Shown: positions 17,110-58,261 of the stretch, piece after piece | Layout: each line of letters begins with the position of its first letter | Position numbering within the stretch: position 1 is the first letter of the stretch | IMG/VR virus record: IMGVR_UViG_3300049043_000112 | Location: 62,001 to 126,000 of that record | Length of the DNA: 64,000 nucleotides | Reading direction: 5' to 3' (one strand) | Notes under the pieces: generated by a model | Database searches by the model: none | Seen by the model: only the letters and a program-made list of their open reading frames with translations | Told to the model about the DNA's origin: nothing | Translations under genes and position numbers: made by a program

Positions 17110-19131
17110 GAGTCGGTTGCGGTTGAGAATATTGTAGCACGGGGTCAGCGCCACCCCAGGAAGGTGGCGGGGTTGCCATACTCACCGATCACAACCCCAT
17201 TGCAGCGGACCTCAGCGTAACCATACTCCTCAGACAGGTTGAAGCACAGATCCCAGGCACGGTCCTCATCACAGGTGTGGTTCTCCCAGGGGGCGGAGGG
17301 GCAGATCACGTCGTAGCGGGTCATGGTTGTTTGGTTGACTGTCCCCATAGTATAAGACCCCCCAGAGCGGATCGTGGGGGTCGGTGGCCAGTGTCAGAAC
17401 TGGATCGCTTCGAAGTGGGCGGCGGCGTCTGCGATGTTATCCTGCTCAACCCCATCCACAAGGGTCTCCAGAATCTGCAGGATCTCATCGCCATTGGTGC
17501 CACGGCGGAGCAGGGAGATGGCAAGGTTGCTGGTCATGGTTCGTTTGTATCAGTGTGGTTTGTGGGCGTCTTTCAGGGCGCACCCGTTCCCATTGTATCA
17601 GGCAGCGATCAGCAGGTCATCCTCCCAACGGGCAACGCTCAGGACCTCATCATAGAACAGCAGGTCAGCGATCTGATCCATCGTAGCACTGAACTGGCGC
17701 TGCTCATCCGCCTTCATAATGGCGGCACGGCACTGGGCAGCGATCTCATCGATGCTCAGAGCGCGGTCGGTGGCGGGGTTGTAGCGCATGGGGTGTTGCC
17801 TTTGGTTGACTTGTACAGTGTAGAGTGGCGGGGGTCAGTTGCGACCCCCTGGTGGACAGTTGCTGGATTGTCAGTCCAGGGCGCCCTCTTCATTCAGGAC
17901 GCCGCAGGCAAACTCCAGACCGTTGCCCAGATCATAGATGCCCAGGTACAGGCGACCGATGCTGATGCCCAGGTACTCACCGCTGCGGGCGGGGGCGTTC
18001 AGGTCAAAACCGAAGTAGAACAGGTCGGCGTTGATCAGGTCGTGAGTGTTGAAGCGCATGGGGTTCAGGTGTGAACTGAGAGAATTGTAGAGCAGTTTAG
18101 GGTCAGTGCTCAGGACCGTGTGCCAGTTGCTCAGGCGGTTGCCAGGGCGGATTCGAAGTTGATCTCCCGCTCTTCAATCTCTGCCCAATCATACTCTCCC
18201 TGTTCACCAGGAGCGCCCTCCAGTTGCTCAGCGTATGCCTGGGCGGTGGACTTGCAATCGAACAGGCGCAGGGAGCGGAAGTCGGCACCCTCATACTGGA
18301 TGCAACCGATCACAGCGTAGACACGTTGCTGAGGCATTGGGGTTCCTTTGAACTGAGATCAGTATAGAGGGTCAGGTGGGGGGTTGGTGCCCCCGTGTGC
18401 CAGTGCCTCAATCGGCATAGAGGGATTGGAAGTCCTCCACAAACTCCCGTGCCTCATCGCCACTCATGCGGGAGATCATCTCCCGCCCGACGGTCTCCCA
18501 GGAGAAGTCGTCTGCCAGGTCGTAGATTGCGACACGTGCCTGGTTGGCGGTCATCCAGGCGGCGTTGATCTGGTCGTAGGACATGGGTTGGTTGGTTGAA
18601 CTGATGTAAGTATAGAGGGTCAGGCGGTCAGAACCCTGCCTGCTGTTCCAGTTGGTCAAGTGGCACACGGTTCCAGGTGGAGAACAGAGTCACGTGATCC
18701 AGAATGCGGCACATCGTATCGGTGTCGGTCTGGGGGTCATCCAGCACCTGATCCATGCCGATGCTCATCAGGCGGTGGATCACGGCGTAGGTCTCCTGAC
18801 TGATGGTGATCTCCATGGGTCTGTTGCGGTTGAGAGTATTGTAGCAGGTCAGCGGCGGTCGGTGAGTGCCAGGAAGGCGAACCCTGCCAGGCAGATCAGG
18901 GCGATGATGCCTGCGGCGGTCACATCCTGCTGCGTCAGTTGGGGGCGGGGACTGGAGGTGCCGACGCTGCTACCGTGCCCTGTGAAGCAGCTGGTGCAGA
19001 CGGGAACGTAGGCGGCGAAGGGGGCAGGCATCGGGTCTGTTGCGGTTGAGATCATTGTAGGGGGTGGCGCCCCTCTCTGGTGAGGTTTGATGGACGGTTC
19101 TCCAATTGGCACACTAAATAGTTGTTGCCTG

Positions 19132-19201
19132 GTTTGTGTGGTAACTTGTCAGGTTGGGGAGATTTTATCATCTCCCCTTATAAATAATACACCACACAAA
19201 C
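19132..19201 (+). promoter_or_regulatory. Endonuclease-associated cis element: outer stem, inner hairpin and late promoter (copy A)
   Basis: GTTTGTGTGGT (19132) pairs with ACCACACAAAC (19191); inner GGGGAGAT/ATCTCCCC hairpin; TATAAATA at 19179. Confidence 0.75.
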
Positions 19202-19210
19202 ATAGAGCAG

Positions 19211-19887: not shown

Positions 19888-20395
19888 GGGGTTCCTTTGA
19901 ACTGATGTAAGTATAAGGGGTCAGACGGTCAGGGAGGCGGGGGGTTGTGCCACTGGTTTAAGTGTCACCACCACCATGGGGTTCTGGGGTTGACTTTCAT
20001 CCCCATGGCAGCACACAGTATGGGGAACCCGATGGCAACGACCATCAGCAGGGCGGCGGCAAGGTAGTGATTCATCGGGCGATCAGGTCGGCGGTAGTGT
20101 GCAGCACGTCAGCTGTCACACTGCGGACGGGACGGATCGGTTCCCATAGTAGCCAGAGCAGCGTGGCAGCGATCAGGATGCGGAGCATGGGTCAGGCGGC
20201 AAGGTGAGCAGGGGAACCACAGGAGCGGTAGAAGTCTACCATGCGCTCCGCCTCTTCAAGGGTGGGGAACCACTGGGAGCGCCACTCACACTGGTTGTAG
20301 GGGACCTGGTAACGGACTTCGTAGCGAATCAGTGCCATGGGGTTGGTTGCTGATGAAATCAGTATAAGGGGTCAGGGTGCCAGGTCTACGGGGTG

Positions 20396-20419
20396 TGTGC
20401 CACCTGTTCAACTGGCACA
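20396..20419 (-). promoter_or_regulatory. Early palindromic element (perfect copy)
   Basis: TGTGCCA-CCTGTTCAAC-TGGCACA, 30 nt from TATACT (20361-20366). Confidence 0.8.
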
Positions 20420-21345: not shown

Positions 21346-21461
21346 TGCTTGTTTGTTGATGCCTTTAGTATTGCACGGATTCAGGAGGACCACAAGGGGT
21401 CTTGTGCCAGTTCTCAAAGTGGCATATAATATAAATAAAATAGACGGACCCCAGCAACTTT

Positions 21462-21932: not shown

Positions 21933-23296
21933 TTAAAGAGTTTATTAATCCTCTCAACTTCCTGCTCAAAAAACTCCATTGCTTCTAGGGATTCAATACC
22001 ATTATCCTCAGCAAGTTCGCCAAGTTTCCACCGCAAATCATTCATCTCCCTAAGTTGAGTTAGAATGAACAAACGAACCTCATTCTTTTGTGATTGTTTC
22101 ATCAGGCGCAGTTGATAACTTTGTTTGCAGTCTGGCGACTAATCTCAAAATCGCAAATCAGTTCCTCCACGATGTCATCATTGCTGACATTAAAGTGGCG
22201 GGAGTGGAGAACGTAATTAAGGCATTCTTCAAGATGACTGATTTCGTAACCCGTTGAAAAAGCAAGTTGTTCGAGGTGTGTGTTTTTCATACTGTTAGTA
22301 TTGCACGAAAAAGGGGAGACCGCAACCCCCCTTGTGCCACTCTCTCAACCGTCCTCCAGCAGATCGGGATAGTAAGATTCAACCTCAGAAATCAGTTCCT
22401 CATCAGTATAGCTGGTGATGTTTTCTTCCATCTGATCACCAACAATACGAAGCAAATCCTTGGTGCTCATGTTATCAAGCAAACGGTCAATGTATGCTTC
22501 AACGAGTGCTTGACGATTGAAAGTGTTGCTCATTGGTTTCAGTTAGAGGGGAAGTTAGCGCAGACAGCATCACACAGGACACGAACTAAGTCATCGAATT
22601 GTTCCTGTGAGTTGGGGAAATGTTCGCAGAAGAACTTATCACAGATAGCATCAATGTCCTCCATCAGTTGTTCACGAGCAGTCAACATTTCCAGTTTAGG
22701 ATTCAATTCAGTCATCAGTCGTTGGTGGGATGATTTACAATTTGGTCTTCAATTTGGTTCGCAAGTTCTTCCATAAACTTACGATCTTCTTCCTCATCCT
22801 CAAACTGTGCATTGTTTCGCACAATTTGCATCAGAAACTCAATTTGTTCGTCAGTGAAGTGATACTCTTTGAGTGTTTGATTCCAAGTCATCAGTAATCG
22901 TAGTTTGCGTTCAGGTACTCATTCACATCAAACTTTTCATCACGAAGTTCGGGAATGTCAAGGTCAAAGATCTCACCAGGAGCATCTTGAATCTCAGACC
23001 AGAGTTCATCAAACATGGTGCATCTCTCAGGGACGAATGTAATGTATCAGGGTCTGGGGGGCATTGCAACCCCCTATGTGCCACTCTCTCAACTGGCACA
23101 AGAATTCTTATACAAACTCCGCAAGATAGTAATCTAAAGGCAACTCAAGTTCTGCCGCTTTAAATTCCCATTCGTCCCATTCTTCAGGGGAAGCATCATT
23201 GAAAAAATCTTCCCGAGTATAACCAGAAGCAGGACCACACATTGACAACAATTGCGACGACCTGAGTAACATAAACCACCACGTGGCAGATATCAA
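21899..23296 (-). other. Cluster of short acidic early ORFs
   Basis: ORFs 21899-22102, 22102-22290, 22345-22533, ~22890-23012 and 23108-23240 are D/E rich; palindromes at 22333, 23077 and 23304. Confidence 0.65.
23077..23100 (-). promoter_or_regulatory. Early palindromic element (perfect copy)
   Basis: TGTGCCA-CTCTCTCAAC-TGGCACA, 31 nt from TACATT (23041-23046). Confidence 0.75.
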
Positions 23297-23498
23297 GGGG
23301 TCTTGTGCCAGTTACGAAACTGTCCACCAAACCCCCCACAAGGTCCCTTGCCGTGATATCTTAATATTAATCGAATGAGGGGAAGGGTATCCCTGCAGAC
23401 GAAAATACATCGCCACTCCCCCTGCCATAAAATATTCATTCGCAATAAGAAACCCTTATTGCGAATAAGAGTCTTGTGCCAATATTTAAACTGTCACA

Positions 23499-25462: not shown

Positions 25463-28400
25463 TCAGGGTTTCATACCTTTCTTCTCTTGTTCTGCTGTCT
25501 GTCTTAAGTGCATTGTTGTATGAAGACGTTGTAGATTTGCATAACGATTATGCTGTCTTGTTTCAAGAGACTTTGCTCTAATCTTTGCAGAAGCAACCTT
25601 TGATTGCCGTGGTGTAAGGACTTGCTCCATAAACTGTTGAAACGTCTTCATTATCCCTTTGATGTCTTTTATGTATTTATTGAAGGCGGGGCTTAACGTT
25701 ACTTATACCCTTCGGTTCAACCATACCAAAGGTATGTATAAGAACTCACTTTTTGACTTCTTGTGTCTTGTATGGAACTTTACCAGTCTCGGTGTACATT
25801 AGAATATCATACTTGAACTTACATTCAAGAGGGCGTTGGTTACAGAGTTTTAGAGTTTCATTGATTGTTGACTGTCTTGTGATTGGACCAGACAATGAAT
25901 ATCCAATAACGGTTGACAGTAAACAATAAACTGGTATCAGAAGATTGGTACGATTTCTGAACTTAGATAACCTTGTTTCTGTATGTGTTGTTCCCATAAT
26001 GTAGCATCCTCAATGTTAAAGAAAATTGCGGTTTGTTTGGTTTGTTTGTCTTTCTTTTGTCGGTAATACACAACTTGGTATTTCATTGTCATTCCAATGT
26101 CTTACGACCCCTGCGATAATGAATAGATTAGTAAAAAGATAAGTAGCGAATATAAAAGTCCGTATATGAGCAATGTGGTCTGCTTCTCTGTCATTTTTCG
26201 ATGCCTTCTCCCCAAGAGACTTTGCCCATAGTCTCCATACAGTTTTTCTCTTCTTCATAAACAGATTCTCTTGACTTCACATAGGTTAATTCATTCCATT
26301 GCTTATTATAACAGAGAATCAACAATCGGTCATTACGATGTAAATCGCAAGCAGCATAGTTCTCATAAGTCTTTGGACGGACATTGGACTTAATCGTAAT
26401 GTAATCCTCTCCCTTGAAGTATACCCACCCTTCGACCTTATCATTCCAGAGAACATAATCATTGACCTGTGGTTCGTAACTCATACAAATGCAGATTCTA
26501 ATGGAGTTTGTTTTGGAATCATCGCTGAATATGGTGTGGTATTCCTTATGTCCACCGACTGTCCAATACTTTTGGAGTTGATGGGGGAATAGTATTTTCT
26601 GGTTTTGGTGTTGTAGAATCCCCAGATACAACGAACTGCATCACCAAGATTGTAGTCAAACCGACGGTCATAATGAATCCAGATAGCAACAACATTGCGT
26701 TTAAACTCTGTTTGCTCATAATACATTCCCTCTGGTGGTTGATGTGGAAATTCAAGAATCACTGACTGCACGGAGATACTTTGGATTGTATCCTGCAGAA
26801 ACATAATACTGCAGTCGTTCATCACATTGTTCTTTAGTCAGTTGTTTGGCATTCTCTTCAATTAATTCCCAACCATGAGAATACATCTCTTCAATACGAT
26901 AAAGTTGTGTCACGTCGTAAATGCCTCCAACAGTCCAGACTCATAATCATCTTGCAAAGCAAACTTCTGAGAATTCACAACTCTTTCCATAATGCGGTCT
27001 GTGTAACGCTCATCAAATTGCTGCTCATTTGCAAGCAGTTCAAATGCTTCCGTATCAGACTTAGCAATCAGATTAATCAGACCACCATACTCAGAAGAGG
27101 GAAATGGCACCCAGTAATCAACAATGTAAAGATACTTCATTTTCTGTGATAAATTACTCTCTAATTGTAGTGTATTTGTCGTATCCTGTCAAGCAATTCA
27201 ATTGTCGTTCAATCTCAAATTTGATGGGTAGCAAATGTGACGTGAAGAACCCAGCATACTGCCCATCTTGAAGAAGATTGCGAACATTCTCAATCTGTTG
27301 CAATGCTAGAATCAATTTCATTCGATCTGTCATTCAAACAAACTCCTGAATGTAATAGTCCACAGTCACTTCCAGTTCTGCTGCTTTTTGCTCATAAAAG
27401 TTGTCAGTATACTGTTTGGCACAAACCCATGCTTCGTGATTAAACTGCTCAACCTCAAAATGCTGCATAAAATCCTCAAATGCGTTCATAAATTGTGCAA
27501 TGTCTTCGTCGTTCATTTTACGTGTTCTTGGTGATGATAATAGGCATCAAACAACTTTTGGTCGCGTTGTATCAAAAAGGCATTGTATCCAAAGAAAGCA
27601 ATTAGAAAGACAACACCAACAAAAACATACTTCGGTGAAAGGTTCATTCGCATTCAAGATCGTAAAGAATAGCAGCAGACATTTCAGAAAGAATCTTTCG
27701 ATTCAAATCGTGAACATCATAGTTAATTTCTTTTGAAAGTTCGGTCCAGTCAGAATGCTTCATAAGAATGTTGAGCATCGCGCCCAGTTCATCGGTTGTA
27801 AATGCCATCAGCAAGCACCATAGAAAGGATTACCAAGTTGGGGAAGGTTAGAGTTGTCACGGGTCTCAGTATAACCATAAGCAACACGCTCACGGATGTC
27901 CAGCAGCAGTTCCACACGGTTCAGAAACTTCTTGGACACTTGACCCTCAGGAGCAAAGGTTACGGTACGGAGGAACCACTCCTTAGAGATGTCACCGTAG
28001 GGGGTCTTGACAGGATAGAAGTCAACCACCATGTTGCCGTCCTTGCTAGTCAGTTGGGGGGTCTGCATTGGGTCTGTCCCGATTACCTCTGTATTATAGG
28101 TCAGAAGGACGGCACCACGTCGTTGCGGAGGACAGTTCCAGAAGTGTCCATTCGCTCGAAGACGCTGTAAAGTTTGTTATACAGTGCTGGCACACTTCCA
28201 TATTCCCGTGCAATTCTATTCTCCTCACGTAGATTCAGTTCCTGCAGTGCAGATAGAATTACACCAATTTCATGAACATTTAGATTTACTTGTGTTTCAG
28301 TCATTGTTTCAGTCCCAACTAATGTTTTCTAAAAGAACTCCTGGCATAATATAACTCCAACCATTGCCACCAACCTTATACTCCCACTTGTATTCACGTT

Positions 28401-30133: not shown

Positions 30134-30689
30134 ATAAAACTTGAAACAAAGAGAAGTTTATGAGTCGTGGTCATCGGGTGTTTCAATTAACTTTCCAATG
30201 ATTACTGCGACAGGAATAGAAAGTAAAATCCACAGAAGTATCCAAGTCATCGTGCGATAATGTCCAGAGACTCCAGCAGCATCATAGCAAGTTCCACCTG
30301 GTTGTCTTCATCAACAACAGGAATGTTGGACTGCACAAACTCACTTGCAAGTTCGTGAAGCAAATCAGTCATTCGCTGGTCAGCATAAGCAAACATAGCA
30401 AACTCAGACTTGAACCCGTTGCTCAGCAGGCGGAGGGACTTGGTGACGGTCAGGTCGTGAACGGTGTTGTCCATTGGTGTCTTTGGTTGATGAATGTATT
30501 ATAGGGCATCCAGAGGGGTCTGGTGTGCCCTATGTGACAGTTGTTGAACTGGTTCAGCGAGTGTAAGAATAACCAGATTTTAAGGATTTATGAATTTCAG
30601 ACATAGTTTCTTCACTACTCTTTAGTCTGGGATTACAAATAGGTGGTGGAGGTGGATTATAGAGTTTAATCGTTAATGATAAACGAAGA

Positions 30690-31148: not shown

Positions 31149-31223
31149 TGCTTGGTTGCGTATGAACGTATTATAGGAGCATACAGGGGCATTTCAGGAA
31201 GCCCTGTGCCACCCGTTAAACTG

Positions 31224-44080: not shown

Positions 44081-47000
44081 ACATTAATATTTAGTAACGA
44101 TGCTCTGGAACAATCGTAGGTTCTTCTACATCTGGACCTTTCATATTTCCAGTATTACAAGAATAAAGAGTTGAAAGTTTTTTACCTTTACGGACGATGT
44201 TAAAGTGGTCTATTTGTCCATTAGAATGAGTGAAGGAAAACCAAACAGCATCATCTCCCATTACCTCATAATGAACACTCACATTATCCAGGAAGAGTTC
44301 ATCAACATTTTGTAGTTCGTTCATAAGTCCCTGATTTTCCCATAGTTCAAATAGTCCCAAAACCTATCGTTATAATCCTCAAAGTCCCATTCAGGATCAG
44401 TTCCATCATAAGTCATCAAGTCACTCCAATTTTGATATACCCATCTCCACATCAATCTTCGCAACCAGAACTGTTTGATCTTATATGTGAGGTTCATTTT
44501 GGTTCCTCATCTTTATTAAAGACTTTATAAGAAGAAGTAGTAGTCATCACAGCAATCAAAAGAAACCAACCCCAACCAGCAATCCCGTGAAGAGCAAGAA
44601 AAGTTGCTCCAACCACACAGGCAATAGAAGTTAGTTCAGAACAAAATAAAAGAAGTGCGTGTTTCATTTGATAGTCAAAGTTTGATTTTTGATTTGACAA
44701 AGACGGGAAAGATTATCACCAGCAGCAGCAACTTGAAAGAAGTTGTAGTTAGTCCCACACTCTTGATTAAGTGCTTGTTGAGTTGTGATGACTTTTGTAA
44801 CTGCTATGATAGGAGCAGAAATAAACATAAGAATAACACTACCAACAATCAAAACAGTAAAAGCATCCTCAGGATTAAAGTTTTTGAGTTTCATCAGGTT
44901 TCTGTGTGTATGAAGTCATTATAAAGCATCCAGAGACACCCAGAGCATCCCCTGTGCCAGTTCTTCAAGTGTCTTATGCTACACCATCAGCACTATCTTT
45001 CCATTCAGTATCTTCTTTATCTCTCAAACTATCCAATACTTGAAGAAGAAAGGCAATAGAGTCAGCATACTCTCGTCCATCTTGCCCACCCATTACCATA
45101 TAAGCAATCTCTTTCTCAGCAAGTTCAATTCTCTCATTTCTTGTAAGTTCTTCTAGTGTAGGACGATACCATTCACCATTTTCCTTCTTTTTGTAACCAG
45201 CAGCAAGTTTTCTGGTTTCTTCCTCTTGTTCCCATCGTTTTACATAAGCAAGTTGTCCGAATTCTTCTTCCTCAATTTCAGCAAGTTTCGTCATCGCATT
45301 ACCATTCTCTTCATAGAGTTTATCAAGAGCATCAAGAGCCTTCCGTTCTGCTTCTCTTTTTTCTGCTAATTCAAACATTTCATCGGGATATGGTTCAGTC
45401 ATTTTGATTTCAAGTTTAGTTTCAGGTGCTTTGGTTCCAATAGTAAGGTCTTCAAGAGTAAATTGACCAGTCATACGGGAAGTTTCTTTACCATTAGTCT
45501 TGAAGATTAAGTCCTTATCCATAAGTTCTCTCAATTTCTGTTTGCCGTATTCTGTGAGTTCTTTTTTAGATTTGCGGAGATCTTCTACTTCCTTATCAGA
45601 AAGATGGAACCCATCAGGAATGTTCCCGTATTCTTCGGTCATTTGAATGTATCCTGAAACTTCTTCCATCCTTCATCTAATTGTTTTTCTGCCCATCCCC
45701 AAACACCGTGCTCCATACCATCAATTTTAGCACATTCAATCTCATCTTGAATGAGTCTGCGGAGCATTTCAATTTGTTCTTCAGTCATCTCTCTCCATTT
45801 CGTTTTCATAATCACGATAATCCCACTTGAGGTGGTGTTGTATCAGTTTGAGAGCACTTGGAACATCCAGAGCATCTCCATCACAAGTCCATTCACCAAC
45901 TTTGATATCATAATACACCAGACAATCTGGGGTGTATTGATGTATGTTGATGTCTATGTGGTTAGTCATTTTTTGAATGTCTCCTTGAAGGTTTCCCAAG
46001 TATAAGATTTCAGTCGTTCCACATCATTTTCAAGTTCTTCAATTCTAAAATAAAGTGCCTTCAAATGTGATGCGAGTTTATAAATGTTTACCTTATCAAT
46101 CTCATAACATCCACTATCATCTGTGAGATTCGGTGAAGATATTTCTCCAATCGTCGGTGTGTTCAGTCATTTGAATGTTTCCTTGAAGGTTTCCCAAGCA
46201 AGGGTATTGAAGTTATTATGCTCATAAGCAAACTTCTCTCCTCGTTCTTCCCTCAACATATAATCAACCTCACACTGAATAAGTGCCCGAAGTTGGTCAA
46301 TCTGTTCGTCAGTCATCGCAGTTTCTCCCGCATAAGTTTCAGACACTCATTCCATTTGTAAGAGTTAGTATCGTGAGATGGAGGTATCCATTCGGCAACA
46401 ATATCTACAAGTCTATCAGTCATCTCATCACAGTCAATACCATATCCAACTTTCTTTCCAACTTCTTCCCAAATCAAGTCATAAAGTGTCTGTGGTTTTG
46501 ATTCTTCCACTCTCTTATACTTCACACCCATAATGGTTGCATATTCTCCTTCTATGAGAACCTTTGAGATGTCGGTTTCAGTCATACTTTCCTTTCTTTA
46601 CATCATTAAACCAAAGTCCTTCAAGAAGACGACGAGTTTCAGTATCAGTAATAGCAATCATCATCACCACACCCTCATCAGTAAATTTTCTCTTATACCA
46701 ATTATGACTTCCATCATTAAATTCATGACGACTATAATTCTCATCATTATAAAGGACAATCTCAAACTTACCACCAAGTTCAAAGTTCATTCTTGGTTGA
46801 GATTTATGTGTCTCAATCTCTTTGAGAAGTTCCAGTTTCTTTTGAAGCACTTTGATTTCTGCTTCTGTCTTTTCAATATCAGAATTAAAAGTCATTTGTT
46901 TCAGGTAAGGAGTAGCATCCATCACACCATCTTTCATTGCTTGTCTAAAAGCATTACGCAGACCTTCGTCTACTTGTTCTGGTGTTTGTGGAGTTGGTTG

Positions 47001-47776
47001 AAATTCAGTCATCGGTTCTGGTAAAAATCCTTCACGGATAATTCGTGGTTTTGGAAACTCTGGTTTATTCATCATATCTCCGCATCAATATTCATAAAAT
47101 TGATCAATTACTTTATAATCTTTATCTCGTACCGTACCAGCATAAGGATAGATAGAACTTACAGTTTCTTCCATATCAGGAACAACTTCATAACGGTAAA
47201 TGTCATCGGCATTTCCACCACAATCAACAGAGATTACATTTCCGTCAGGTAAAGTACCACTATAAGTAAAAATATACTTATAATAACTTGAAAATTTCAC
47301 CTTTACTTCACCGTATTTTTCAATAAACTCTTCTTTTGTCATTTGGAGTTGGCAGTGTTGTTTGTGTATGAGAGCATTATACGACAAAAGGCACTCGGTT
47401 TCAAGTGCCCGTGTTCCAGTTTGCGAAGTGTCCTTTTCTATTTCATCATAATACTCTGGTTCATCAGGTGGTTCAGGGTACCCATCTTTTAATTGTACTG
47501 CTTCATAACCCTTCTGGAAGGCATCCCAACTCACAGCATCCCAATCTCCCATAGCAATACTTGTTTCTGGATAATGTCCATAAACATCTTTATATGCTTC
47601 TTCTACTGGAGATTTCATCTTCTCCATTTCTTCCAAGAGTGCAAGTTGCTTTTCCAGCACTTTGATTTCTCCTTCTACTTGTTCAATTAGGTTCATCAGT
47701 CTTAGAGCATCTCCCAGTATTATAACCTGTAAGGCACCCGAAATCAAGTGCCCGTATTCCAGTTTATAAAGTGTCC

Positions 47777-48502
47777 TTATGATACTCTCACTCTTTTAGA
47801 AGTATCAATACCTTTTGCTTTTTGATATTTTGATAAACCACCAGAATTAGTGATATAACCAGTTTCAAGGCACATCCATTTTTGTGCGTTATTTTTTCTG
47901 GATAATTCACTTCTTTGTTCTGGTGTTAGTGAAAAAATACCAGTTCCATTTTTCATTTGGGTTCTTGCCCCCATTCTACCATATTCACTTCTTACTTCTT
48001 TTGGTAATTTTCCAAGTCCGCTTGCATATGCTTTTTTGGCAGAGGCAGATAATTCTTCACTCGTTAGTGTGAATATGCCGAGTTTATTATCTCTTGTATA
48101 AGCACCATTTCTTTTTCCAAGTTCAACTCTTTCTTCTGTTGTAAGTTGAAACATTCCTAATTTATTTTTATGTTGATTTTTTCCTTTTCTACTTGCCTCT
48201 TCAAAAGATGGTATATAACAAAACTTTGTAGAAGTTTGTTTGGATTTATTAGCAAAGTGTGGATTTTCAACTACTTTATAATACTCTTGTAAAATAATCT
48301 TATCAGCATATGCTTCCTCTCTTGTAGCATAATCACTTTTCAAAATTATCTTCTGTGTTGGATTGAATGTCCTATCGTGAAAAGAACCAAAATACTTTAC
48401 ATCTTCTTCTGGTAAGCATTTACAAGTTCTACTACCAATATATCCTCTACCATATTCCTCATAGGAATAATAGGTGTAATGATACTCTTTTTGAGTTTCC
48501 AT
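47777..48502 (-). mobile_element. GIY-YIG-type free-standing endonuclease with tandem helical repeats
   Basis: YHYTYYSYEEYGRGYIGSR..YFGS, NPHFANK; GIFxLTxEExxE repeats; C-terminus shared with the 43210 gene. Confidence 0.8.
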
Positions 48503-48600: not shown

Positions 48601-51600
48601 CAGACATTCTTATTTATTATCGTTCTCTACATCTTCTTCCAGTTGTTTATAAAGAGCATATTCATATCCGCACAAAAATGCACTTTCAACCCAAGAAATA
48701 AGAATTTGTTTCCTTTGGTTCTCATCTTCAATTCTTATGTCGTCTTCAAAGTATTCATACCGAAATGTAAATCTACCATAAAAATCTCCATAAAACCACT
48801 TATTAAATGAAAGTTGAGCATCTTCTTGAGGGTCAAGATATTCATTTGTTGGATGTTTAGTCATTCTTCCAAACTCTTAATACATTTTTGAATAAGGGCA
48901 TTCCACCTCTTTGGAGTAAGTTTCTCACTCGCATAAGAACTCCTAAAAGGATACTTATACCAAGTCAAACGGAAGTTCTCACTTGGGATTTCAAAGTTAG
49001 GTTTATCCATCTCATCTTCTTCATCACCCCAATAATAAGGACGGATGATAAAGAAGTCGTTGGAGAAATGTGGAGTATATCCATAATCTTTTTCTCCTGT
49101 TTTTTCTGTAATCGCATCAATCAGGATTTGAAATGGGCCACCCATCCATTTCTCACGAGGAACACTATATTCTTCTGTGGGATTGCCGAATAAGATTTGT
49201 CCTAGTTCAAGTTCGTTAGTCATTTCAGGTTCAGTAGTTCTTTTTCTTCATCAGTTAAGGAAGCAAGGTCTTTTTTGAGTTGTTTAAGTTTCCGTTCTTT
49301 TGCTTTTGCTTTGACTGCTTTTTCTTTTTCCAGTTGTTTTAGTCGTTTCGCATACTCTTTATCGTTTTCTTCCCGATGCTTATAAAGGTAATATTCAGTG
49401 TATTTTTCACCACCATAATCCCACTCATATTCACTTTCAATCCCTTCCCAACCAGCATCTAACTCTGCTTGTAGTGAGGTAATAATACTTTCAAGAGTTC
49501 CTTCAAGAATCCCATAATATTTTTGAGTTTCTTTGACTTGAATTCGTTTGATAGTCATTTCATTCACCTTTCAATTGACGAATTTCACTTTCAAGTTCAT
49601 AAATGCGTTCATTCATTTGGTGAAGAAGCATAATCAACGAACGACCACAGATGGTTTCACCACTATCTTCTGAAATAGCAGAAATAATATCTTCTGCTTC
49701 AGAGTTGTTGTAGGGGAAGTATTCCTTTGCGTGTGCTTCGGGATATTGAGTATCCCAAGACCTTTCAGGAATAGTTTTTTCAAAGAGAGTAGTCATTTCA
49801 GTTCTCCATAAGAAAGATGTTGGATTTCTTCTTTGGTCAAGGTTTTCATATAACCACGAGGATACTCATTATCATAAGCATTGAAGACAAAAACTGGAAT
49901 GTTTCTTTCCTTACAGATTTGTTTGAACTTTTCTTCATTCAGTTCAAACTTATGAACATAAACAACGATTGGATAATCATCCCAAAATCCAACAAGACTT
50001 TCTGGATAATAATCCCACTCAAACTCATCAAGTTCTTGAATGATTTTTTCTACATCTTGAATATGTTCTGGATTAGTGTAAATGCGTCCGTATCCTTTGT
50101 AATTGAAGGCAGTCATTTCAAATCTGGTGTTGTTTAAGGTGAAGTTTGATACAATCCATAACATCATTAAGAGTTAGACATTCTCCTTCATAAGTAAAGT
50201 CTCCATTTTCCAGATGTAGAATTTCAAGAGTGTAATAAAACATTCCTTGAGGATGATATTGTTTGATGTCAATGTGGGTTTCGTAGTCCATCAGTTCTTA
50301 TAGAGTTTGTAGATTGCGTCTGCGAGTGCGAGTGCTTCTTCTTTATCCATACAAATGTAATTAACCCTTTTATCACCTTTCTCTTTATTATAATCAAACT
50401 CCCAATAAGAAACAGTGAAACCATCGCATCCTACATCAAGATGAGTGTCTTCGGCAGTGTACCAGAAATCTTGATGTTGTTGAATACGAACTTGATTGGT
50501 GATTTTAAGAGTCATTGGTTTGGTTGCGTATAAAAGTATTATATCAAATGGAATAAGAAGAACTCACTTCCGTCCAAGGAAGAGTTTCCAGTTCCTCATC
50601 GGTAAATTGAATACCATCATCATAACTTGCTTCATTTTTGTAGAGATAAAACTGCTTAAAATTAACAACAGTCCCTCTCAAATCTCCTTCTTCATCTACT
50701 TCATAGACAAGCACATCACAATACTTATTCCTATCATAAGTCAAGATTGTTGCCTTACGAATAGGTGCTGGTTTTCCAGCAACATCACCATAACATTCAA
50801 TAGGATAATCAGTAAAAGCATCAAGCATTTGGAGTTCCTTTGTGTATGAGTGTATTATAAGGCATCCAGAGGCACCTGTGAAGTGTCCTTGTGCCAGTTC
50901 TTCAAGTGTCAGTCAAGGTTTTCAATCTCTTCACATAGTTCCAATAAATCATAACACATAATCACACCAGGAGACACTTGAAGAACATTAATCACCTCAC
51001 GGAGAGTAGCAGCAAGATGTAGGTTAGGGTCGTGCTGTGGGTCATAATAATAATGAGAAAATACTTTTCTTGCTTTTTCTTTCATAGTAGTCATAGTGCT
51101 CCCTCCTCAATCATTTTACGCATCGTTGCTTCACTAATAATGTCTTGTTCCAGTTCGTGTGGTGGTGCTACTTTGAGGTAGATTTCATAATGAAACTCAT
51201 TCATATCTTTGGAAGGGATATATCCTTTGTAAGAAATCATTTTTTGAATTGCTTTGCGGGCAGGGTCTTCCCAGTCCTCTTTGAAGTTGAACATTACAGA
51301 ACCTCACATAATGGAAAAACTCTTACACTTGAAATAAATCCTGGTTTTGTGTATTTTTCTTTGTAATCTGCTGCGAACTCTTTTGCTTGAAGTTTAGTTT
51401 CAAAAGTCCCAAAGTATCGGTGAAATGCTTCTACACCTTCATATTTGTTATAAAGTCCCACTATCCACTTATGAGAATGTTCTGGGTAGGTGTCGTTTTC
51501 TTCTATCCAAGAGTAGTATGCGTCCTTATTCATCACCAACTCCCATACTTGTCTTCAATTTCTTTCACCCGTTCCATAAAACTATCCTCTCCGTGATCGC

Positions 51601-52952
51601 CAGCATACAACCTATCAATATGATACATCACATCAGACAACTTGTGAAGATAGTGGACTTGTTCTTCCAGATACTCTATGGTTTCTGGACTATAGTTCTT
51701 CACATAACCATACTCATCCTCTTTGTTATTGTTGAGGATTTCTTCTTCCAAGTCCCTAGCAAATTGGGAAACTTGGAAGTAGCAGTAATCACCAAAGTGT
51801 CCGCCGCTCATTCTTCCTCCTCCTCATAAGGGAACATAGCATCATACTCTTCATCAGTCAGAGTAAGATACTCCACATCAGCATCTTGATGATCTTCGGC
51901 ATATATTACCTGATAACGCTGGAATTCGTTCCAGTCATTAGCAGCATATTCTATGATGCCGTTCAGAAGACAAAGGTAGTTCATCACAATACCTCCCAAT
52001 CACATTCCCAATGACAATCGTTGCTTACATTTACCCAGAAGAAGTATTTCTGGTTCTCTGATGCGAGAAACATCATACCATCACCCTTGTCCTGTTCCAC
52101 AATACAAATAGGATTGTTGTCCATCGTATTACACAGACGGTTCTTGGCTTTGCTGCTTTTGGGTCTTACGGTTACTCTTCTCATTTTGAATCTCCAATTT
52201 CAGTTTGCGGATACCAGTAATAAAATAAGCGAAGTCACGGGTTTCTGTGATAGGTTTGATTTCACCACAGACACCACACTTTGACTCATAAACAGAGGAG
52301 CATCCTACGGAATACACTCCATACTTTTTCCCGCAGTCAAAGCAGGTATTGGCAGCATTCTCAAGTTTCTTGAGTAGTGCTTTCTTCTCTTTGAGGTTCA
52401 TAGTAGAGTTCAACTCCATACTTGTTTTTGAGGTTGTCTGTGAGGTAATCATACAGCAGGTCGGCAAACCCGTAATGGGGTCTTGTGCCACTTTCTATAC
52501 TGGAACTGGTCGCCACTGTCCACATTATATCCAGTGCTTTCTTATCAGGTAGGTTCTTCATCTTCTAATGCCTCATCTAAATCCACACCTTCCAATACTT
52601 CATTTGCCCACTTCAACTTATCCATTACTTCATCCATAGGATATGTCTCTACTTTACCAAGCTCAACATCTTCTACCATTTGCATCAGGTGCTCTAAAAA
52701 GTGTTTGGGATAAATGTCATCTTCCAAACTATCCCAGAAATAAAGAGCACACTGTTCTAATGGGTCATCACTTATAAGAAGAGCATATTCTTGATAGTTG
52801 TCTCCCATCAAGTCACCCCAGTTCTTGAAAGCATACCAACAATTATACCACCCTTGAATGATACAAGAGTGCCAAATATATTCAAACCAAGTTAATTTGG
52901 TTTTTTTCTTATCAGTTCCTAAAAGAGGTCGTGAAAACATATGAAACATTCT

Positions 52953-54900: not shown

Positions 54901-56925
54901 GTATAAGGTTTATTTAATATTCGGTTAGCATTGATCTACACAATCGTTTACAAGATTGGGTTTCTTCATCGCACTCAGTTAAACACTTAAAGTATGCGTT
55001 CATCAATTCGTGTTCGTCAATGAACTCATCTATGGTCTTTTCTAAACTATTCCAAGCAGCCAGTTGATTGAAAGAAATTAGGTTGTGCATAATAACCTCC
55101 ATGCACAAAGAATAACATAATAAAGGGAGTTTCGTTCATCCGTATCACCTCGTACAGTATACTATTATCTAGGTGTTTTGTCAGGATATCTTAACAATAA
55201 TTTATGCCTACGAGTTTATACTTATTCGTTTTCAAGTTCCGCTAGGTAATCTGTCCACCACTGGGGGTCTTTCTCATACTTCCAGTTGGGAACTTCTTTA
55301 CCGTGCTCAAAATACCAACGCCATATTGCCTTATCAATCACTTCAGCAATCTCAATCCTCCTCATTCTTAGCATCAGTGTCTCCATATGGGTTCTCCACA
55401 TAGGTTCTGTGTTCTCGTTTGGCATCTTCTCGGACATAATTGACTTCTGATACGCTAGAGGACAACCATAAAGATACTTTCATTATAACGTATATAACTG
55501 CCAGTGGAAGAAAACATAAGGAAAGTATGACTGCTTGTTTCATTCCTGCTCCAAACATTTTTCAAATTTATCTCTTAACTCATTCAGTTTCGTTTGATGT
55601 TGAAACTCCATAATATGTTCATTTAGTTCTTTTTCCTTATCAGTAAATTGCATACGATACTTTGTCTTAATATCAATCAATCGCACCATATCCATATAGT
55701 GCTCTGGACTTTTATTGACAAACTCTTCGTAGGTCAATCTCTTGTTCTCCAATCGTTTTCGTCTTCATCACGCTTAAACCAATCAAGAAGTTCATCTGGA
55801 TTGTCAAAACCACGACGACCAAAACGTTCGTGTCCCATACCACCAATATCAAGTTGGTTTAGGAAGTCATCCATTTCATCCATATCAGGGTTCTCTGCTC
55901 TCCTTCTTGCCTGACGGAGTATTGTAGCGGCAGAGCGGTTTGCTTTTGCAAGTTTTTCTGCCCAAATCATATCTTCAAGACTTACCTCTTCATGAAGTAC
56001 AATCTTCTCACAGATTGCTTCAAGTCTTAACCGATATTGTGTAGAGAGCATAACCTACTCCAAGTATGAGATTATTTATTTTCGTATTCGTCCATTAACT
56101 CCTTTGCGAGTTTCATAGAACGACGCCACATTAGATATTTTACCATAGGATTGCGTGGATTATTCAATAACCACCACTTCTGCTTTTCATAGTTAGACTT
56201 TGCTAACTTAAGCATATAATAAAAAGCAGCGGCAACACTTTCATCAGTCACGATGAAATATGCCACCACTGCAAATACGATAAACCAAGCGTAATAAGTC
56301 ATCGTCTAATAGTTTTTAGATAGTCTAGCACGTGCTCACGAACTGACATGAGTTCGTTGTAACATTTTTGATTGTGAGCACATTGGCGTAGTTCGTGATC
56401 TGGTTTATGAACACTTTCTATAAACAAATCCAAACCACGATTCCATTTGACTTCGGGAGTTTCTTCCATAATCAATGATGTAGTTGTACTATTTAACTAG
56501 TTAGAAAAACTTGTCTAAACTAGAAACCGATGCGCCTTTTGCAGACTTTTGAATGTAGGTTTTGGCGGATTTGTAGTTGTTGGCAACGTGAACTTGTTGA
56601 CCATTGTAAATGATTATAAACTTCTTACCAAATGGAACTGCTGCCCACATTCCATCTTTGGTTACATAACCTTCAGGGTCTCCTGGTGTTTCTTTTAAAA
56701 TACCAGGACGAGGAATAAAAGGTTTCTGAAACTTTTCGCTTATCCGAATACTGCAGTGACACTGATAATTTTAGCCTTAGGATTACGAGCAAGTGCAGTT
56801 TCTCTTGCATCTTGATAATCACGTGCCTCTACGATCTCATCAAAGACCTTACCAGCAACAAAAAGTTGAACTTTGCAGCGCATTGGGTGGATTCCTCCTG
56901 ATGTGTAGGTAGTATAGCAGAAAAA

Positions 56926-58155
56926 TCAGCGTTTGACCACGCTGATGGCAGGGAGACCCTCATTGAAGACGGTATCCACCACCGCTTGGACCTTCCGTGC
57001 CGTGCTGATGCCCACAGAGGAGTAGACAGGGATGCAGACCAGACCGAAGGACTTGGTGTAGTCTTGCAGTGCTCCAGGGGCAATACGACCGCTCTGGAGA
57101 CCCGCTGCGTCGTCCTTATGAAGGCGGATGACCCGTCCAATGGTCTGGGAGATGCCGATATAGTCCATAGAGCGCATAAACAGCACTGCCTCCAGACCAG
57201 ACACGTTGATGCCCTCGGACAGGATGCTATGGTGCAGAACCACAAACTTCTTAGAGTCATCCTTGCCCCAGGCACTCAGAGTGTCGAAGAACACCTCACG
57301 GTTGACCTTTTGACCATCAATTACGGCACCAGTCTTAGACGTGATATACATCCAAGAAAAACCACGATCCTCCAGTTGTTGACAGAAATCAGTCTCAGAA
57401 ACCAGAGAAACAATCTGTTTGGTTGCCTTAGAGCAAATCAGAACCTTGCCAACTTCTTGGGCATCAATAGTCTGAATCAGATTCTCACAATCGACATCAG
57501 CAACAATTTGACCCTTAGAGAGCATCTCAAACTGCTGCACAACAACCTTTGGGGGCACAATGAAACCACCCTCCACCAGTTCAGGAGCAGGGACGTTACA
57601 GATGACGTTGCCATAAACGGCAGCGTCGTTCATCCCAGGTTTGGAAACAGTAGCAGAATGCTTAGGAGTAGCAGTGAAGAAATAGCAGCGGTCAGCATTA
57701 GTAGCGAAGTGCTCCGTAGCAGGGAAAAAGTGACGCTGGACACTGTTATGCGCTTCATCGAAGTAAATGGTATCAACGTGAATATCTGCCTGTTGCAGGC
57801 GTTGCAGGGAGTTATAGGTGGTGAAAATCAGTTGGTGCTTGTATGCACGACGGGACCAGTTGTAAATCTCAGAAGGTTTAGTGGTGCTCTGGTGATGCGT
57901 CTCACCACTATGCACGTGCAGAACAGCAGCAGTCGTGATAAACTCCAGAAACTCAGCAGAGAGTTGCTCAGCAAGCAAAATGCGAGGAGCAACAACAACA
58001 ATGGTCTTAGGAGTATCGGACTGAAACTCACGCAGAGCATCAAAGATAGCAATGTTAGTCTTACCACCGCCAGTCGGAATGATCACCTGACCTTTCAGAT
58101 ACTTAGCAAGGGCATCCAGAGCACGTTGCTGGTGGGGGCGAAGTTGGATCATCAT
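56926..58155 (-). CDS. SF2 DEAH helicase (type III restriction res-subunit-like)
   Basis: LRPHQQRAL, IPTGGGKT, YFDEAH, FTATP, ILSEGINV, QTIGRVIR; early promoter and palindrome at 58175/58210. Confidence 0.85.
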   Translation of the reverse strand: MMIQLRPHQQRALDALAKYLKGQVIIPTGGGKTNIAIFDALREFQSDTPKTIVVVAPRILLAEQLSAEFLEFITTAAVLHVHSGETHHQSTTKPSEIYNWSRRAYKHQLIFTTYNSLQRLQQADIHVDTIYFDEAHNSVQRHFFPATEHFATNADRCYFFTATPKHSATVSKPGMNDAAVYGNVICNVPAPELVEGGFIVPPKVVVQQFEMLSKGQIVADVDCENLIQTIDAQEVGKVLICSKATKQIVSLVSETDFCQQLEDRGFSWMYITSKTGAVIDGQKVNREVFFDTLSAWGKDDSKKFVVLHHSILSEGINVSGLEAVLFMRSMDYIGISQTIGRVIRLHKDDAAGLQSGRIAPGALQDYTKSFGLVCIPVYSSVGISTARKVQAVVDTVFNEGLPAISVVKR

Positions 58156-58261
58156 CAACCAATTCAATACAGATATTATAACACCAGAATCGGCAGCACA
58201 AAACTCCAGTGTGCCAGTTCTGAAATTGTCCTCTCAACAATAAATAATAAAAAAAACCAAA

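What the first reader, a model, noticed from the sequence alone, without database searches (positions are those of the whole stretch)
17384..58233. About 26 copies of a 24-bp palindrome at a fixed 30+/-1 nt from sigma70 -10 boxes
Seen: TGTGCCA-(G/C)TT-N4-AA(C/G)-TGGCACA or degenerate forms start at 17384, 17852, 18119, 18396, 18644, 19090, 19946, 20396, 21403, 22333, 23077, 23304, 23475, 28128, 29670, 30533, 31205, 34927, 35413, 43188, 44953, 47412, 47755, 50890, 52484 and 58210. Nearly all lie 29-32 nt from a TAxxxT-type box, often with a poor -35. The promoter-proximal half is the better conserved. None was noticed in the structural blocks. Known: a novel element controlling early genes was reported for cyanophage Syn9, and this probably corresponds to it (recalled, not aligned). 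Inference: it is the site for a dimeric activator at about -43 to -66. It defines the early regulon here, including the methylase/helicase module, the SprT-like gene and the SF2 helicase. The binding factor is not evident in this window.
Basis: partly seen in the sequence, partly recalled or inferred. Interest (0 to 1): 0.65.

Follow-up and report, generated by a model that had tools for sequence, protein, structure and literature searches.

The report
Cyanophage early-promoter palindrome cassettes
A freshwater T4-like cyanophage carries 27 copies of a 24-bp palindrome, each set 28-31 bases upstream of a -10 promoter box in front of small genes; the same element occurs in Syn9 and other cyanomyoviruses, so it is a real but probably already-described early-gene control element whose binding protein is still unknown.

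Summary
All 26 listed copies exist, and I found a 27th at 32681. At 14 bits or more the whole 236-kb genome has 37 matches against 0.7 in shuffles, and 27 of them lie in window 17.4-58.2 kb. In 26 copies a -10 box (TATAAT, TATACT, TACAAT) lies 28-31 nt away on the minus strand, mostly 29. In 24 of them an ATG follows 19-28 nt later (outliers 6 and 33 nt).

The genome is a T4-like cyanomyovirus (psbA, psbD, gp6, gp25) from lake samples. The region is syntenic with the small-ORF block of Syn9.

The same palindrome and geometry occur in Syn9, S-SCSM1, P-SSM3 and S-RIM2. They also occur in 33 uncultured viral loci: 237 copies, 219 with a -10 box at 27-32 nt.

The two arms do not covary, so this is a protein-binding site rather than a hairpin. 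A GC-rich hairpin, often terminator-like, usually fills the -35 position, which makes each unit a PeSL-like terminator-promoter cassette. Contigs of relatives break and rejoin at these cassettes.

No host regulon was found in 301 picocyanobacterial genomes. T7-like cyanophages lack the motif. Four DNA-binding families tested gave no match in the phage.

I could not read the Syn9 paper, so identity with its published element is unverified. No transcription start was mapped. Activator versus repressor is unresolved.

The parts
17384..17407 (-). palindrome copy 1 (14.7 bits)
   Evidence: -10 TATACT at 17349-17354, spacer 29; ATG 17324
17852..17875 (-). palindrome copy 2 (15.7 bits)
   Evidence: -10 TACACT at 17817-17822, spacer 29, strong spacer hairpin; ATG 17789
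18119..18142 (-). palindrome copy 3 (16.9 bits)
   Evidence: -10 TACAAT at 18084-18089, spacer 29; ATG 18059
18396..18419 (-). palindrome copy 4 (23.0 bits)
   Evidence: -10 TATACT at 18361-18366, spacer 29; ATG 18337; the upstream gene's TGA lies inside the motif
18644..18667 (-). palindrome copy 5 (28.6 bits)
   Evidence: -10 TATACT at 18609-18614, spacer 29; ATG 18584
19090..19113 (-). palindrome copy 6 (19.7 bits), better half distal
   Evidence: -10 TACAAT at 19054-19059, spacer 30; ATG 19031; a + strand HNH gene starts at 19211 on the other side
19946..19969 (-). palindrome copy 7 (23.1 bits)
   Evidence: -10 TATACT at 19910-19915, spacer 30; ATG 19887; the homologue in P-SSM3 is also motif-driven
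20396..20419 (-). palindrome copy 8 (30.0 bits)
   Evidence: -10 TATACT at 20361-20366, spacer 29; ATG 20338
21403..21426 (-). palindrome copy 9 (28.0 bits)
   Evidence: TGn-extended AATACT at 21367-21372, spacer 30; ATG 21345 of the DUF6267 gene; the S-SCSM1 homologue is also motif-driven
22333..22356 (-). palindrome copy 10 (21.8 bits)
   Evidence: TGn-extended AATACT at 22297-22302, spacer 30; ATG 22290 only 6 nt after the hexamer, so leaderless-like
23077..23100 (-). palindrome copy 11 (29.7 bits)
   Evidence: -10 TACATT at 23041-23046, spacer 30; ATG 23016
23304..23327 (-). palindrome copy 12 (22.5 bits)
   Evidence: -10 TATGTT at 23268-23273, spacer 30; ATG 23242
23475..23498 (+). palindrome copy 13 (22.5 bits), probably facing the + strand
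   Evidence: no -10 on the minus side; TACAAT at 23528-23533, 29 nt away on the + side, before + ORFs 23611-25462
28128..28151 (-). palindrome copy 14 (19.2 bits)
   Evidence: -10 TATAAT at 28093-28098, spacer 29; ATG 28068
29670..29693 (-). palindrome copy 15 (19.5 bits)
   Evidence: -10 TATAAT at 29635-29640, spacer 29; ATG 29610
30533..30556 (-). palindrome copy 16 (23.8 bits)
   Evidence: -10 TATAAT at 30498-30503, spacer 29; ATG 30474; the weak SprT-like ORF 29636-30133 lies downstream
31205..31228 (-). palindrome copy 17 (25.2 bits)
   Evidence: -10 TATAAT at 31170-31175, spacer 29; ATG 31148 of the DUF7717 gene
   Evidence: -10 TAGACT at 32646-32651, spacer 29; ATG 32623 of the Eco57I-like methylase; lies inside the 3' end of ORF 32620-34740
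34927..34950 (-). palindrome copy 19 (20.4 bits)
   Evidence: -10 TATAAT at 34893-34898, spacer 28, terminator-like spacer hairpin; ATG 34869, then the ResIII/T5orf172 gene 32620-34740
35413..35436 (-). palindrome copy 20 (29.8 bits)
   Evidence: -10 TATACT at 35378-35383, spacer 29; ATG 35352
43188..43211 (-). palindrome copy 21 (22.4 bits)
   Evidence: -10 TATAAT at 43151-43156, spacer 31; -35 TTGAAA sits in the loop of a -17 kcal hairpin; ATG 43128
44953..44976 (-). palindrome copy 22 (25.4 bits)
   Evidence: -10 TATAAT at 44918-44923, spacer 29; ATG 44894; a contig in run X1 joins this copy's flank to copy 25
47412..47435 (-). palindrome copy 23 (20.0 bits), inside ORF 47085-47696
   Evidence: -10 TATAAT at 47376-47381, spacer 30; terminator-like hairpin with a T run; in-frame ATG 47342
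47755..47778 (-). palindrome copy 24 (18.5 bits)
   Evidence: -10 TATAAT at 47719-47724, spacer 30; ATG 47696
50890..50913 (-). palindrome copy 25 (26.2 bits)
   Evidence: -10 TATAAT at 50854-50859, spacer 30; ATG 50828; joints in relatives' contigs fall at 50832-50834
52484..52507 (-). palindrome copy 26 (21.6 bits)
   Evidence: -10 TATGAT at 52448-52453, spacer 30; ATG 52419
58210..58233 (-). palindrome copy 27 (23.0 bits), first of the block
   Evidence: -10 TATAAT at 58175-58180, spacer 29; SF2 helicase 56926-58155/58167; the helicase is also motif-driven in Syn9, S-SCSM1 and P-SSM3

Best explanation
Each copy is the upstream operator of a compact terminator-promoter cassette that heads a small gene in the hyperplastic, presumably early, block of a T4-like cyanomyovirus. 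Read on the minus strand, the cassette has this order. First comes the stop codon of the preceding gene, often inside the palindrome. Then comes the 24-bp palindrome TGTGMCASTT-N4-AASTGKCACA. Next is a 28-31-nt G+C-rich spacer that usually folds into a hairpin and replaces a -35 box. Then comes a -10 box (TATAAT, TATACT or TACAAT), sometimes TGn-extended. A leader of about 15-18 nt with an AAGGA-type ribosome site follows, and then the ATG. I propose that a dimeric sequence-specific DNA-binding protein sits on the palindrome, at about -42 to -65 if transcription starts about 7 nt after the -10 box. Its promoter-proximal subunit would touch RNA polymerase bound at the -10 box, switching this whole class of promoters as one regulon. 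I favour positive control at the start of infection. Shown: the anatomy, the enrichment, the fixed spacing, the lack of arm covariation, and conservation across cyanomyoviruses. Inferred: protein binding, the contact with polymerase, the sign of control, the early timing and the start sites. The repeated cassettes also serve as crossover points that shuffle genes, as PeSLs do in other T4-like phages.
For: Enrichment and confinement to one block. Spacing of 28-31 nt while the spacer sequences are unrelated. The same spacing holds in 181 unique sites from 33 uncultured viral loci: 29 nt in 84, 30 in 60, 28 in 20, 31 in 11. It also holds in Syn9, S-SCSM1, P-SSM3 and S-RIM2. The arms do not covary: 63% of cells are paired against 65.5% in shuffles, and 7.44 pairs against 7.33 +/- 0.07 with shuffled partners in 181 sites. 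Only 3 of 26 copies fold at -8 kcal/mol or better. Both half-sites carry about equal information (12.2 and 13.6 bits), as expected for a dimer site. The -35 is mostly weak, and the spacer is 63% G+C with hairpins in 16 of 26 copies. Regulon membership is conserved. The helicase is motif-driven in four of five phages. Two of three other motif-driven genes with homologues keep the motif, and seven genes without it have homologues without it. The block is syntenic with the small-ORF block upstream of gp25/gp6 in Syn9, P-SSM3 and S-RIM2. Sigma70-type promoters with good -35 boxes and no palindrome sit in the neighbouring metabolic-gene stretch, so this looks like a separate promoter class.
Against: No transcription start, timing or binding data exist. 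The two RNA libraries gave only contigs of relatives. No host regulon with this site was found in 301 picocyanobacterial genomes: 27 sites against about 18 in the reversed-pattern control, many of them homologous repeats. This argues against an ordinary host transcription factor. No HTH_17, HTH_3, sigma70 region 4 or HU-type protein is detectable in the phage. The conserved small proteins of the block have no known fold. A centre near -53 is not a classic activator position. Many cyanobacterial promoters work with a -10 box alone (my own knowledge), so activation may not be needed.
Confidence: 0.5

Rival explanations
1. The palindrome is the operator of a phage-encoded regulator made early or in the middle of infection. 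This regulator shuts the early class off, or holds polymerase at it, in the way phi29 p4 acts from upstream sites. On this view the -10 (or extended -10) promoters fire unaided on entry.
For: No host regulon shares the site. T7-like cyanophages of the same hosts lack it: P-SSP7 whole, and the early ends of Syn5 and P60. The motif is shared across the cyanomyovirus lineage. In the wider set many sites have a TGn-extended -10 box and about a third have a good -35 box, so they could be self-sufficient. Highly conserved small proteins of unknown function sit in the helicase operon (phrog_495, phrog_685).
Against: An operator at -42 to -65 does not overlap the polymerase footprint, so simple occlusion is unlikely. 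No recognisable DNA-binding protein was found in the phage. In this genome most copies lack a -35 box and a TGn.
Confidence: 0.22
2. The palindrome has no role in transcription factor binding. It would be the conserved edge of a mobile PeSL-type cassette, kept alike by recombination or gene conversion between copies, and it would matter mainly as a crossover point (or as part of a terminator) for gene shuffling.
For: The cassettes lie between ORFan genes in a hyperplastic block; only 12 of 110 ORFs have homologues in four relatives. Joints in contigs of relatives fall at cassette positions: 47082 to 50832, 47004 to 50528, 45561 to 47358. One contig in the likely source sample joins the flank of copy 25 to the flank of copy 22. 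Spacer hairpins with T runs look like terminators. PeSLs are described as such elements in other T4-like phages (PMC4122927).
Against: Homology between copies ends at the palindrome: spacers and flanks are unrelated, yet the spacing is held to within about 1 nt in hundreds of copies from distant phages. Recombination alone does not explain that. The palindrome itself rarely folds and its arms do not covary. The joints were seen at 85% likeness in metagenomic contigs and may mix organisms.
Confidence: 0.15
3. The palindrome acts as an RNA or cruciform hairpin that terminates, processes or stabilises the upstream gene's transcript.
For: It is a 10+4+10 inverted repeat at the 3' end of the preceding gene, and the stop codon is often inside it. 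Three copies fold at about -11 to -12 kcal/mol.
Against: There is no compensatory change between the arms in 26 or in 181 copies. Position 8/17 is more often unpaired than paired. Twenty-three of 26 copies fold weakly. No T run follows the palindrome. A fixed distance to the -10 box is not needed for a terminator.
Confidence: 0.05

Closest known systems
Early-gene regulatory element of T4-like cyanophage Syn9 (Doron et al. 2016, ISME J 10:1437; recalled from its abstract, paper not held)
   Same: It is a T4-like cyanomyovirus with the same genomic block. Syn9 itself carries this palindrome with the same about 29-nt distance to a -10-like box before small genes and the helicase. As I recall, the paper reports that its element is abundant and conserved among T4-like cyanophages, which fits. 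Host-like sigma70 promoters form a separate class here too.
   Different: I could not check that the published logo is this palindrome. This phage is from fresh water and has far more strong copies: 27, against 2 in Syn9 at 1-2 mismatches and about 7 by PWM. It also has TATAAT/TATACT boxes instead of Syn9's TATTCT.
PeSL (promoter-early stem-loop) cassettes of T4-like phages RB49/phi1, T4/PST, KVP40/nt-1 (PMC2839356, PMC4122927)
   Same: Both are composite terminator-promoter units with a stem-loop, a -10 box, a ribosome site and a start codon. Both are repeated between small ORFan genes in hyperplastic regions and are associated with indels and gene swaps between relatives.
   Different: PeSLs have a sigma70-type -35 box and a stem-loop upstream of it, and no sequence-specific palindrome is described. 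Here the hairpin occupies the -35 position, and an extra 24-bp palindrome lies upstream at a fixed distance. Mini-circle formation was not tested here.
Activator-dependent bacterial promoters with a palindromic upstream site (CRP class I/II; cyanobacterial NtcA at -41.5)
   Same: A dimer-type palindrome at a fixed helical distance from a -10 box, with a weak or absent -35 box.
   Different: The sequence matches neither GTA-N8-TAC nor TGTGA-N6-TCACA. The centre lies near -53. No cognate protein is known, and no host regulon was found.
phi29 protein p4 sites (my own knowledge, not tested here)
   Same: A phage regulator binds inverted repeats upstream of early and late promoters at a fixed distance and contacts RNA polymerase.
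   Different: No p4-like protein is known in cyanomyoviruses. This comparison is an analogy of mechanism only.

Membership tests
Syn9-type early regulatory element of T4-like cyanophages | Present in the Syn9 genome upstream of genes of the small-ORF block | tested here: met
   Syn9 sites at 44774, 47204, 48558, 51000 and 52996 have a 29-31 nt spacer to a -10-like box. Sites 49078 and 51211 are further PWM matches whose spacing I read by eye only. Seven pattern hits against 0 in the control.
Syn9-type early regulatory element of T4-like cyanophages | Sequence identical to the published motif | not testable with these tools
   Paper not held under its DOI, PMC id or PubMed id. No other held paper quotes the motif.
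Syn9-type early regulatory element of T4-like cyanophages | Lies upstream of mapped early transcription starts | not testable with these tools
   Only contigs of two metatranscriptomes were available; they show no starts.
Syn9-type early regulatory element of T4-like cyanophages | Conserved among T4-like cyanophages | tested here: met
   S-SCSM1, P-SSM3 and S-RIM2. Thirty-three IMG/VR loci with 237 copies.
PeSL cassette | Repeated between small ORFs in a hyperplastic region | tested here: met
   Twenty-seven copies among about 110 ORFs, of which only 12 have homologues in four relatives.
PeSL cassette | Sigma70-type promoter with both -35 and -10 boxes | tested here: not met
   The -10 box is strong, but of the ten copies in 28-48 kb only four are among the listed -35-plus--10 matches. 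In 181 other sites, 67 have 4 of 6 or better.
PeSL cassette | Stem-loop adjoining the promoter | tested here: inconclusive
   Sixteen of 26 spacers fold at -6 kcal/mol or better, and several carry a T run. However, the hairpin lies over the -35 position, not upstream of it.
PeSL cassette | Ribosome site and start codon at a fixed distance | tested here: met
   The ATG lies 19-28 nt after the -10 box in 24 of 26 minus-strand copies (outliers 6 and 33 nt), with an AAGGA-type box before it in many copies, seen by eye.
PeSL cassette | Breakpoints of indels and swaps between relatives at the cassettes | tested here: inconclusive
   Joints at 47082/50832, 47004/50528, 45561/47358 and 50910/44974, but from metagenomic contigs at 85% likeness.
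NtcA or CRP site | Consensus GTA-N8-TAC or TGTGA-N6-TCACA | tested here: not met
   The logo of 181 sites is TGTGMCASTT-N4-AASTGKCACA.
Intrinsic terminator or structured RNA | Base pairing kept by compensatory change | tested here: not met
   pairing is no better than with shuffled partners.

The most novel reading that the evidence does not exclude
The palindrome is read by a factor that belongs to the cyanomyovirus lineage rather than to the host, for example one delivered with the DNA. Some picocyanobacteria would then have copied the same cassette (palindrome, hairpin, -10 box) in front of a toxin-antitoxin-like HTH_17 + PIN pair in a defence-gene neighbourhood. The phage's own early switch would fire a host suicide or defence module on infection.
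Probability: 0.06. Interest if true: 0.8.

Novelty: new member of a known kind. Interest (0 to 1): 0.4.

Why it matters
T4-like cyanophages are major killers of the picocyanobacteria that carry out much of aquatic photosynthesis. They lack the T4 proteins (Alt, Mod, MotA, AsiA) that set the T4 early and middle programme (PMC2984593), so how they launch infection is open. This genome offers 27 natural variants of one operator, and related viral contigs offer hundreds more. All share strict geometry, which is ideal material for pull-downs and reporter tests to find the missing factor. The finding that host genomes lack a matching regulon narrows the search. The cassettes also explain how this block swaps ORFan genes.

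Tried and rejected
- **Megablast of 7 kb against the phage collection:** no match.
- **tRNA scan of the window:** none found.
- **Literature:** eight searches and several full-text look-ups did not yield the Syn9 motif sequence.
- **RNA evidence:** the only RNA runs hold contigs of 85-95% relatives and gave no starts or ends.
- **Host transcription factor idea:** the palindrome with up to 3 mismatches gave 27 sites in 21 of 301 genomes of the host family, against about 18 for the reversed control. Four hits fall in or next to one LysR-type open reading frame, by my reading of the flanking translation. I therefore rejected a sizeable host regulon.
- **Host HTH_17 + PIN locus flanked by two palindromes:** the PIN protein's only viral relative lies in a 68% G+C contig without the motif, so a cyanomyovirus origin was not supported.
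- **T7-like cyanophages:** no copies.
- **Phage-encoded binder:** Pfam, PHROG and PDB searches of ten conserved small proteins gave only unknown-function families. Genome-wide scans for HTH_17, HTH_3, sigma70 region 4 and HU gave nothing.
- **Sigma54 reading of TGGCAC:** rejected. No TTGC follows at 5 nt, and, to my knowledge, marine picocyanobacteria lack sigma54.
- **Not used:** structure prediction, the big protein searches and the complex prediction. No protein candidate justified them.

Full report
**What the window is.** The window is bases 62,001-126,000 of a single 236,016-bp viral record that CheckV rates as complete. The record encodes psbA and psbD, a gp6-type baseplate protein at 11077-12573 and gp25 at 12897-13298. 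It is therefore a T4-like cyanomyovirus. Near-identical DNA is held only by lake and freshwater metagenomes. Its D1 protein is closest (93-94%) to those of Cyanobium and Synechococcus. Nearly all genes are on the minus strand. The stretch 16-58 kb is a run of about 110 mostly tiny ORFs that ends at gp25/gp6, the same layout as in Syn9, P-SSM3 and S-RIM2. Only 12 of these ORFs have homologues in four sequenced relatives, so this is a hyperplastic region.

**The observation.**
- The strict pattern is eight-fold enriched.
- A symmetric weight matrix finds 37 sites at 14 bits or more in the genome, against 0.7 in block shuffles. Of these, 27 lie in window 17.4-58.2 kb.
- One copy was missed, at 32681-32704 in front of the Eco57I-like methylase.
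- The boxes seen to the left of each copy on the plus strand are TATAAT, TATACT or TACAAT on the minus strand. The promoters therefore drive minus-strand genes.
- The gap between palindrome and hexamer is 29 nt in 15 copies, 30 in 9, and 28 and 31 in one each.
- An ATG opening an ORF follows 19-28 nt after the hexamer in 24 of the 26 minus-strand copies; the outliers are 6 nt (copy 10) and 33 nt (copy 23).
- Twenty-two of 40 hits at 13 bits or more have a strong -10 box at 28-31 nt, against 3% of random positions.
- Copy 23475 is the exception. It has no minus-strand box but has TACAAT 29 nt away on the plus side, before a plus-strand block.

**Anatomy of a unit.** On the minus strand the order is as follows.
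1. The end of the preceding gene, whose TGA or TAA often lies at motif positions 1-3 or 10-12.
2. The palindrome.
3. A spacer that is 63% G+C in a 37% G+C genome. It folds at -6 kcal/mol or better in 16 of 26 copies, and several spacers have a T run like an intrinsic terminator.
4. The -10 box.
5. A short leader, with an AAGGA-type box in many copies (seen by eye).
6. The ATG.

Of the ten copies in 28-48 kb, only four are among the listed -35-plus--10 matches. Those at 43188 and 47412 have TTGAAA in the loop of the hairpin. In the neighbouring stretch of metabolic genes (Dam, CP12, bilin reductase, an epimerase/dehydratase) there are classical TTGACA-17-TATAAT-type promoters without the palindrome. 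So two promoter classes exist side by side.

**Hairpin or protein site.**
- In the 26 copies the two arms pair in 63% of cells, no more than when partners are shuffled (65.5%). There are few double changes.
- Only three copies fold stably.
- In 181 unique sites from other viruses the arms make 7.44 Watson-Crick pairs, against 7.33 +/- 0.07 with shuffled partners.
- The two variable positions do not covary convincingly. Positions 5/20 give an odds ratio of 2.2 (p = 0.04). Positions 8/17 show no association (odds ratio 0.6, p = 0.15).
- Both halves carry similar information (12.2 and 13.6 bits).
- The better half is proximal in this phage but distal in S-SCSM1.

This is the signature of two sequence-specific half-sites read by a dimer. 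It is not the signature of a selected RNA or cruciform structure.

**Relatives.**
- Syn9 has the motif on its gene strand at 44774, 47204, 48558, 51000 and 52996, each 29-31 nt from a -10-like box (mostly TATTCT) and followed by a conserved leader and ATG. Copies at 49078 and 51211 are further PWM matches; I read the spacing of 49078 by eye.
- S-SCSM1 (the closest isolate, helicase 66% identical), P-SSM3 (a Prochlorococcus phage) and S-RIM2 show the same arrangement.
- Whole-record pattern counts exceed the reversed control: 7 against 0, 5 against 1, 8 against 1 and 6 against 2.
- A scan of IMG/VR for the perfect palindrome found 33 loci. Less than one is expected by chance, by my estimate from the pattern's 20 fixed bases.
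- These 33 loci hold 237 copies at 13 bits or more, up to 14 per 10 kb. Of these, 219 have a -10-like box at 27-32 nt, mostly at 29 and 30 (93 and 83 boxes). Most loci share proteins with this phage.
- The spacer sequences are unrelated, so the spacing itself is under selection.
- The helicase is motif-driven in four of five phages. Two of three other motif-driven genes with homologues keep the motif, and seven genes without it have homologues without it.

**Shuffling.** Only assembled contigs could be laid on 45001-51000.
- Contigs of 85-95% relatives, including two from RNA libraries, skip from 47082 to 50832, from 47004 to 50528 and from 45561 to 47358. Two of the six breakpoints (47082 and 50832) lie in leaders just upstream of an ATG and one (47358) just downstream of a -10 box; the other three lie inside coding sequence.
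- One contig of the best DNA holder joins 50910 to the sequence that follows copy 22. This is the junction expected from a crossover between copies 22 and 25 (a circle, a duplication or another gene order).
- This fits the PeSL model of cassette-mediated shuffling (PMC4122927). It rests on metagenomic contigs and is not proof.

**Who binds.**
- In 301 genomes of the host family, the palindrome with up to 3 mismatches occurs 27 times, against about 18 for the reversed control. Many hits are the same locus in related genomes. The phage is about a thousand times denser in such sites, by my estimate that about ten of its copies would pass this test. A host factor with its own regulon of such sites is therefore unlikely.
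- T7-like cyanophages of the same hosts lack the motif.
- The phage has no detectable HTH_17, HTH_3, sigma70 region 4 or HU-type protein.
- Its conserved small proteins of the block are of unknown function.
- The factor remains unknown, and its origin (host, virion or early phage product) is open.

**Verdict.** The best reading is an operator for a dimeric protein coupled to -10-only promoters of the early block, embedded in PeSL-like terminator-promoter cassettes (confidence about 0.5 for positive control). The rivals are a phage-made shut-off regulator (0.22), a purely recombinational cassette edge (0.15) and an RNA hairpin (0.05). The element is very probably the one reported for Syn9 early genes. 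That identity rests on my recollection of the abstract plus the direct finding of the motif in Syn9, because the paper could not be read. I therefore rate it a new member of a known kind, with moderate interest. The new points are the lack of arm covariation, the strict spacing across hundreds of copies, the hairpin in place of the -35 box, the lack of a host regulon, and the unusually large array in a freshwater phage.

Noticed in passing
window 16000-20400: A G+C island (0.52-0.61, against about 0.37 for the genome) made of a dozen tiny minus-strand ORFs. Each has its own TACAAT/TATACT promoter and a similar leader. Some of the promoters (near 16570, 16870, 17120 and 18830) lack the palindrome. 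The G+C level is host-like, which suggests import from a high-G+C source.
   Followed up: partly
window 19211-19651 (+), 23978-24343 (+), 52953-53591 (-): Two low-G+C HNH endonuclease ORFs on the opposite strand and one NUMOD3-type endonuclease lie inside the block. They are likely homing endonucleases.
   Followed up: partly
window about 21430-21437: A T4-late-type TATAAATA box lies directly beside palindrome copy 9, about 25 nt before the plus-strand ORF 21462-21932. An early-type and a late-type promoter therefore sit back to back.
   Followed up: no
window 47085-47696: Palindrome copy 23, with its hairpin and -10 box, lies inside a 203-aa ORF, and an in-frame ATG at 47342 follows it. This is either a nested start or two genes fused by loss of a stop codon.
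   Followed up: no
window 20449-21345 and 22102-22290: The DUF6267 gene and a 62-aa gene share the same TGn-AATACT promoter and nearly the same first codons (M-Q/K-N-T-H-L-E). The duplicated cassette therefore extends into the coding sequence.
   Followed up: no
window 35376-41267: A stretch of metabolic and accessory genes holds Dam methylase, CP12, a ferredoxin-dependent bilin reductase, an NAD-dependent epimerase/dehydratase and a hemagglutinin-like protein. It is served by sigma70-type promoters with good -35 boxes (35984, 38577, 40787) and has no palindrome.
   Followed up: partly
L098/L099 (host-family genomes G150, G011), positions 1501-1524 and 2773-2796 of L099: An HTH_17 protein plus PIN protein pair lies next to an AbiEii-like ATPase. 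It is preceded by the palindrome, a hairpin and TAGTAT, and followed by a second, inverted palindrome. Each palindrome abuts a GGTGGCTTGA-type box, and similar box-plus-palindrome units occur in L100-L102. So a phage-like cassette layout exists in host genomes.
   Followed up: partly
L105-L108 (four host-family genomes), position 1501-1524: A conserved intergenic palindrome (TGTGCCAGTAGATAAATTGGCACA type) lies between a small ORF next to an Nramp transporter gene and a CN-hydrolase-type gene. It has no -10 box at the phage distance.
   Followed up: no
window 44953-50913 (run X1): A contig at the same depth as the genome joins 50910 to the bases that follow 44976. This is the junction expected from recombination between palindrome copies 22 and 25 (a circle, a tandem duplication or an alternative gene order).
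   Followed up: partly
window 56299-56469 and 56740-56883: Two very small proteins in the helicase operon are unusually conserved. One is 56 aa and 72% identical to Syn9 gp58 (phrog_495), with a His/Cys cluster. The other is 47 aa (phrog_685); its S-SCSM1 homologue is annotated as an RNA polymerase inhibitor. Neither has a PDB or Pfam match.
   Followed up: partly
window 23866-23979: Inverted repeats of 24 nt that are 92% complementary (and a perfect 14-nt pair) lie around 23866-23979, just before the HNH gene.
   Followed up: no
window 61328-63640: A 770-aa minus-strand protein has C-terminal leucine-rich repeats (LRR_8, LRR_4). This is unusual for a phage and lies next to fibre-like genes.
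   Followed up: no
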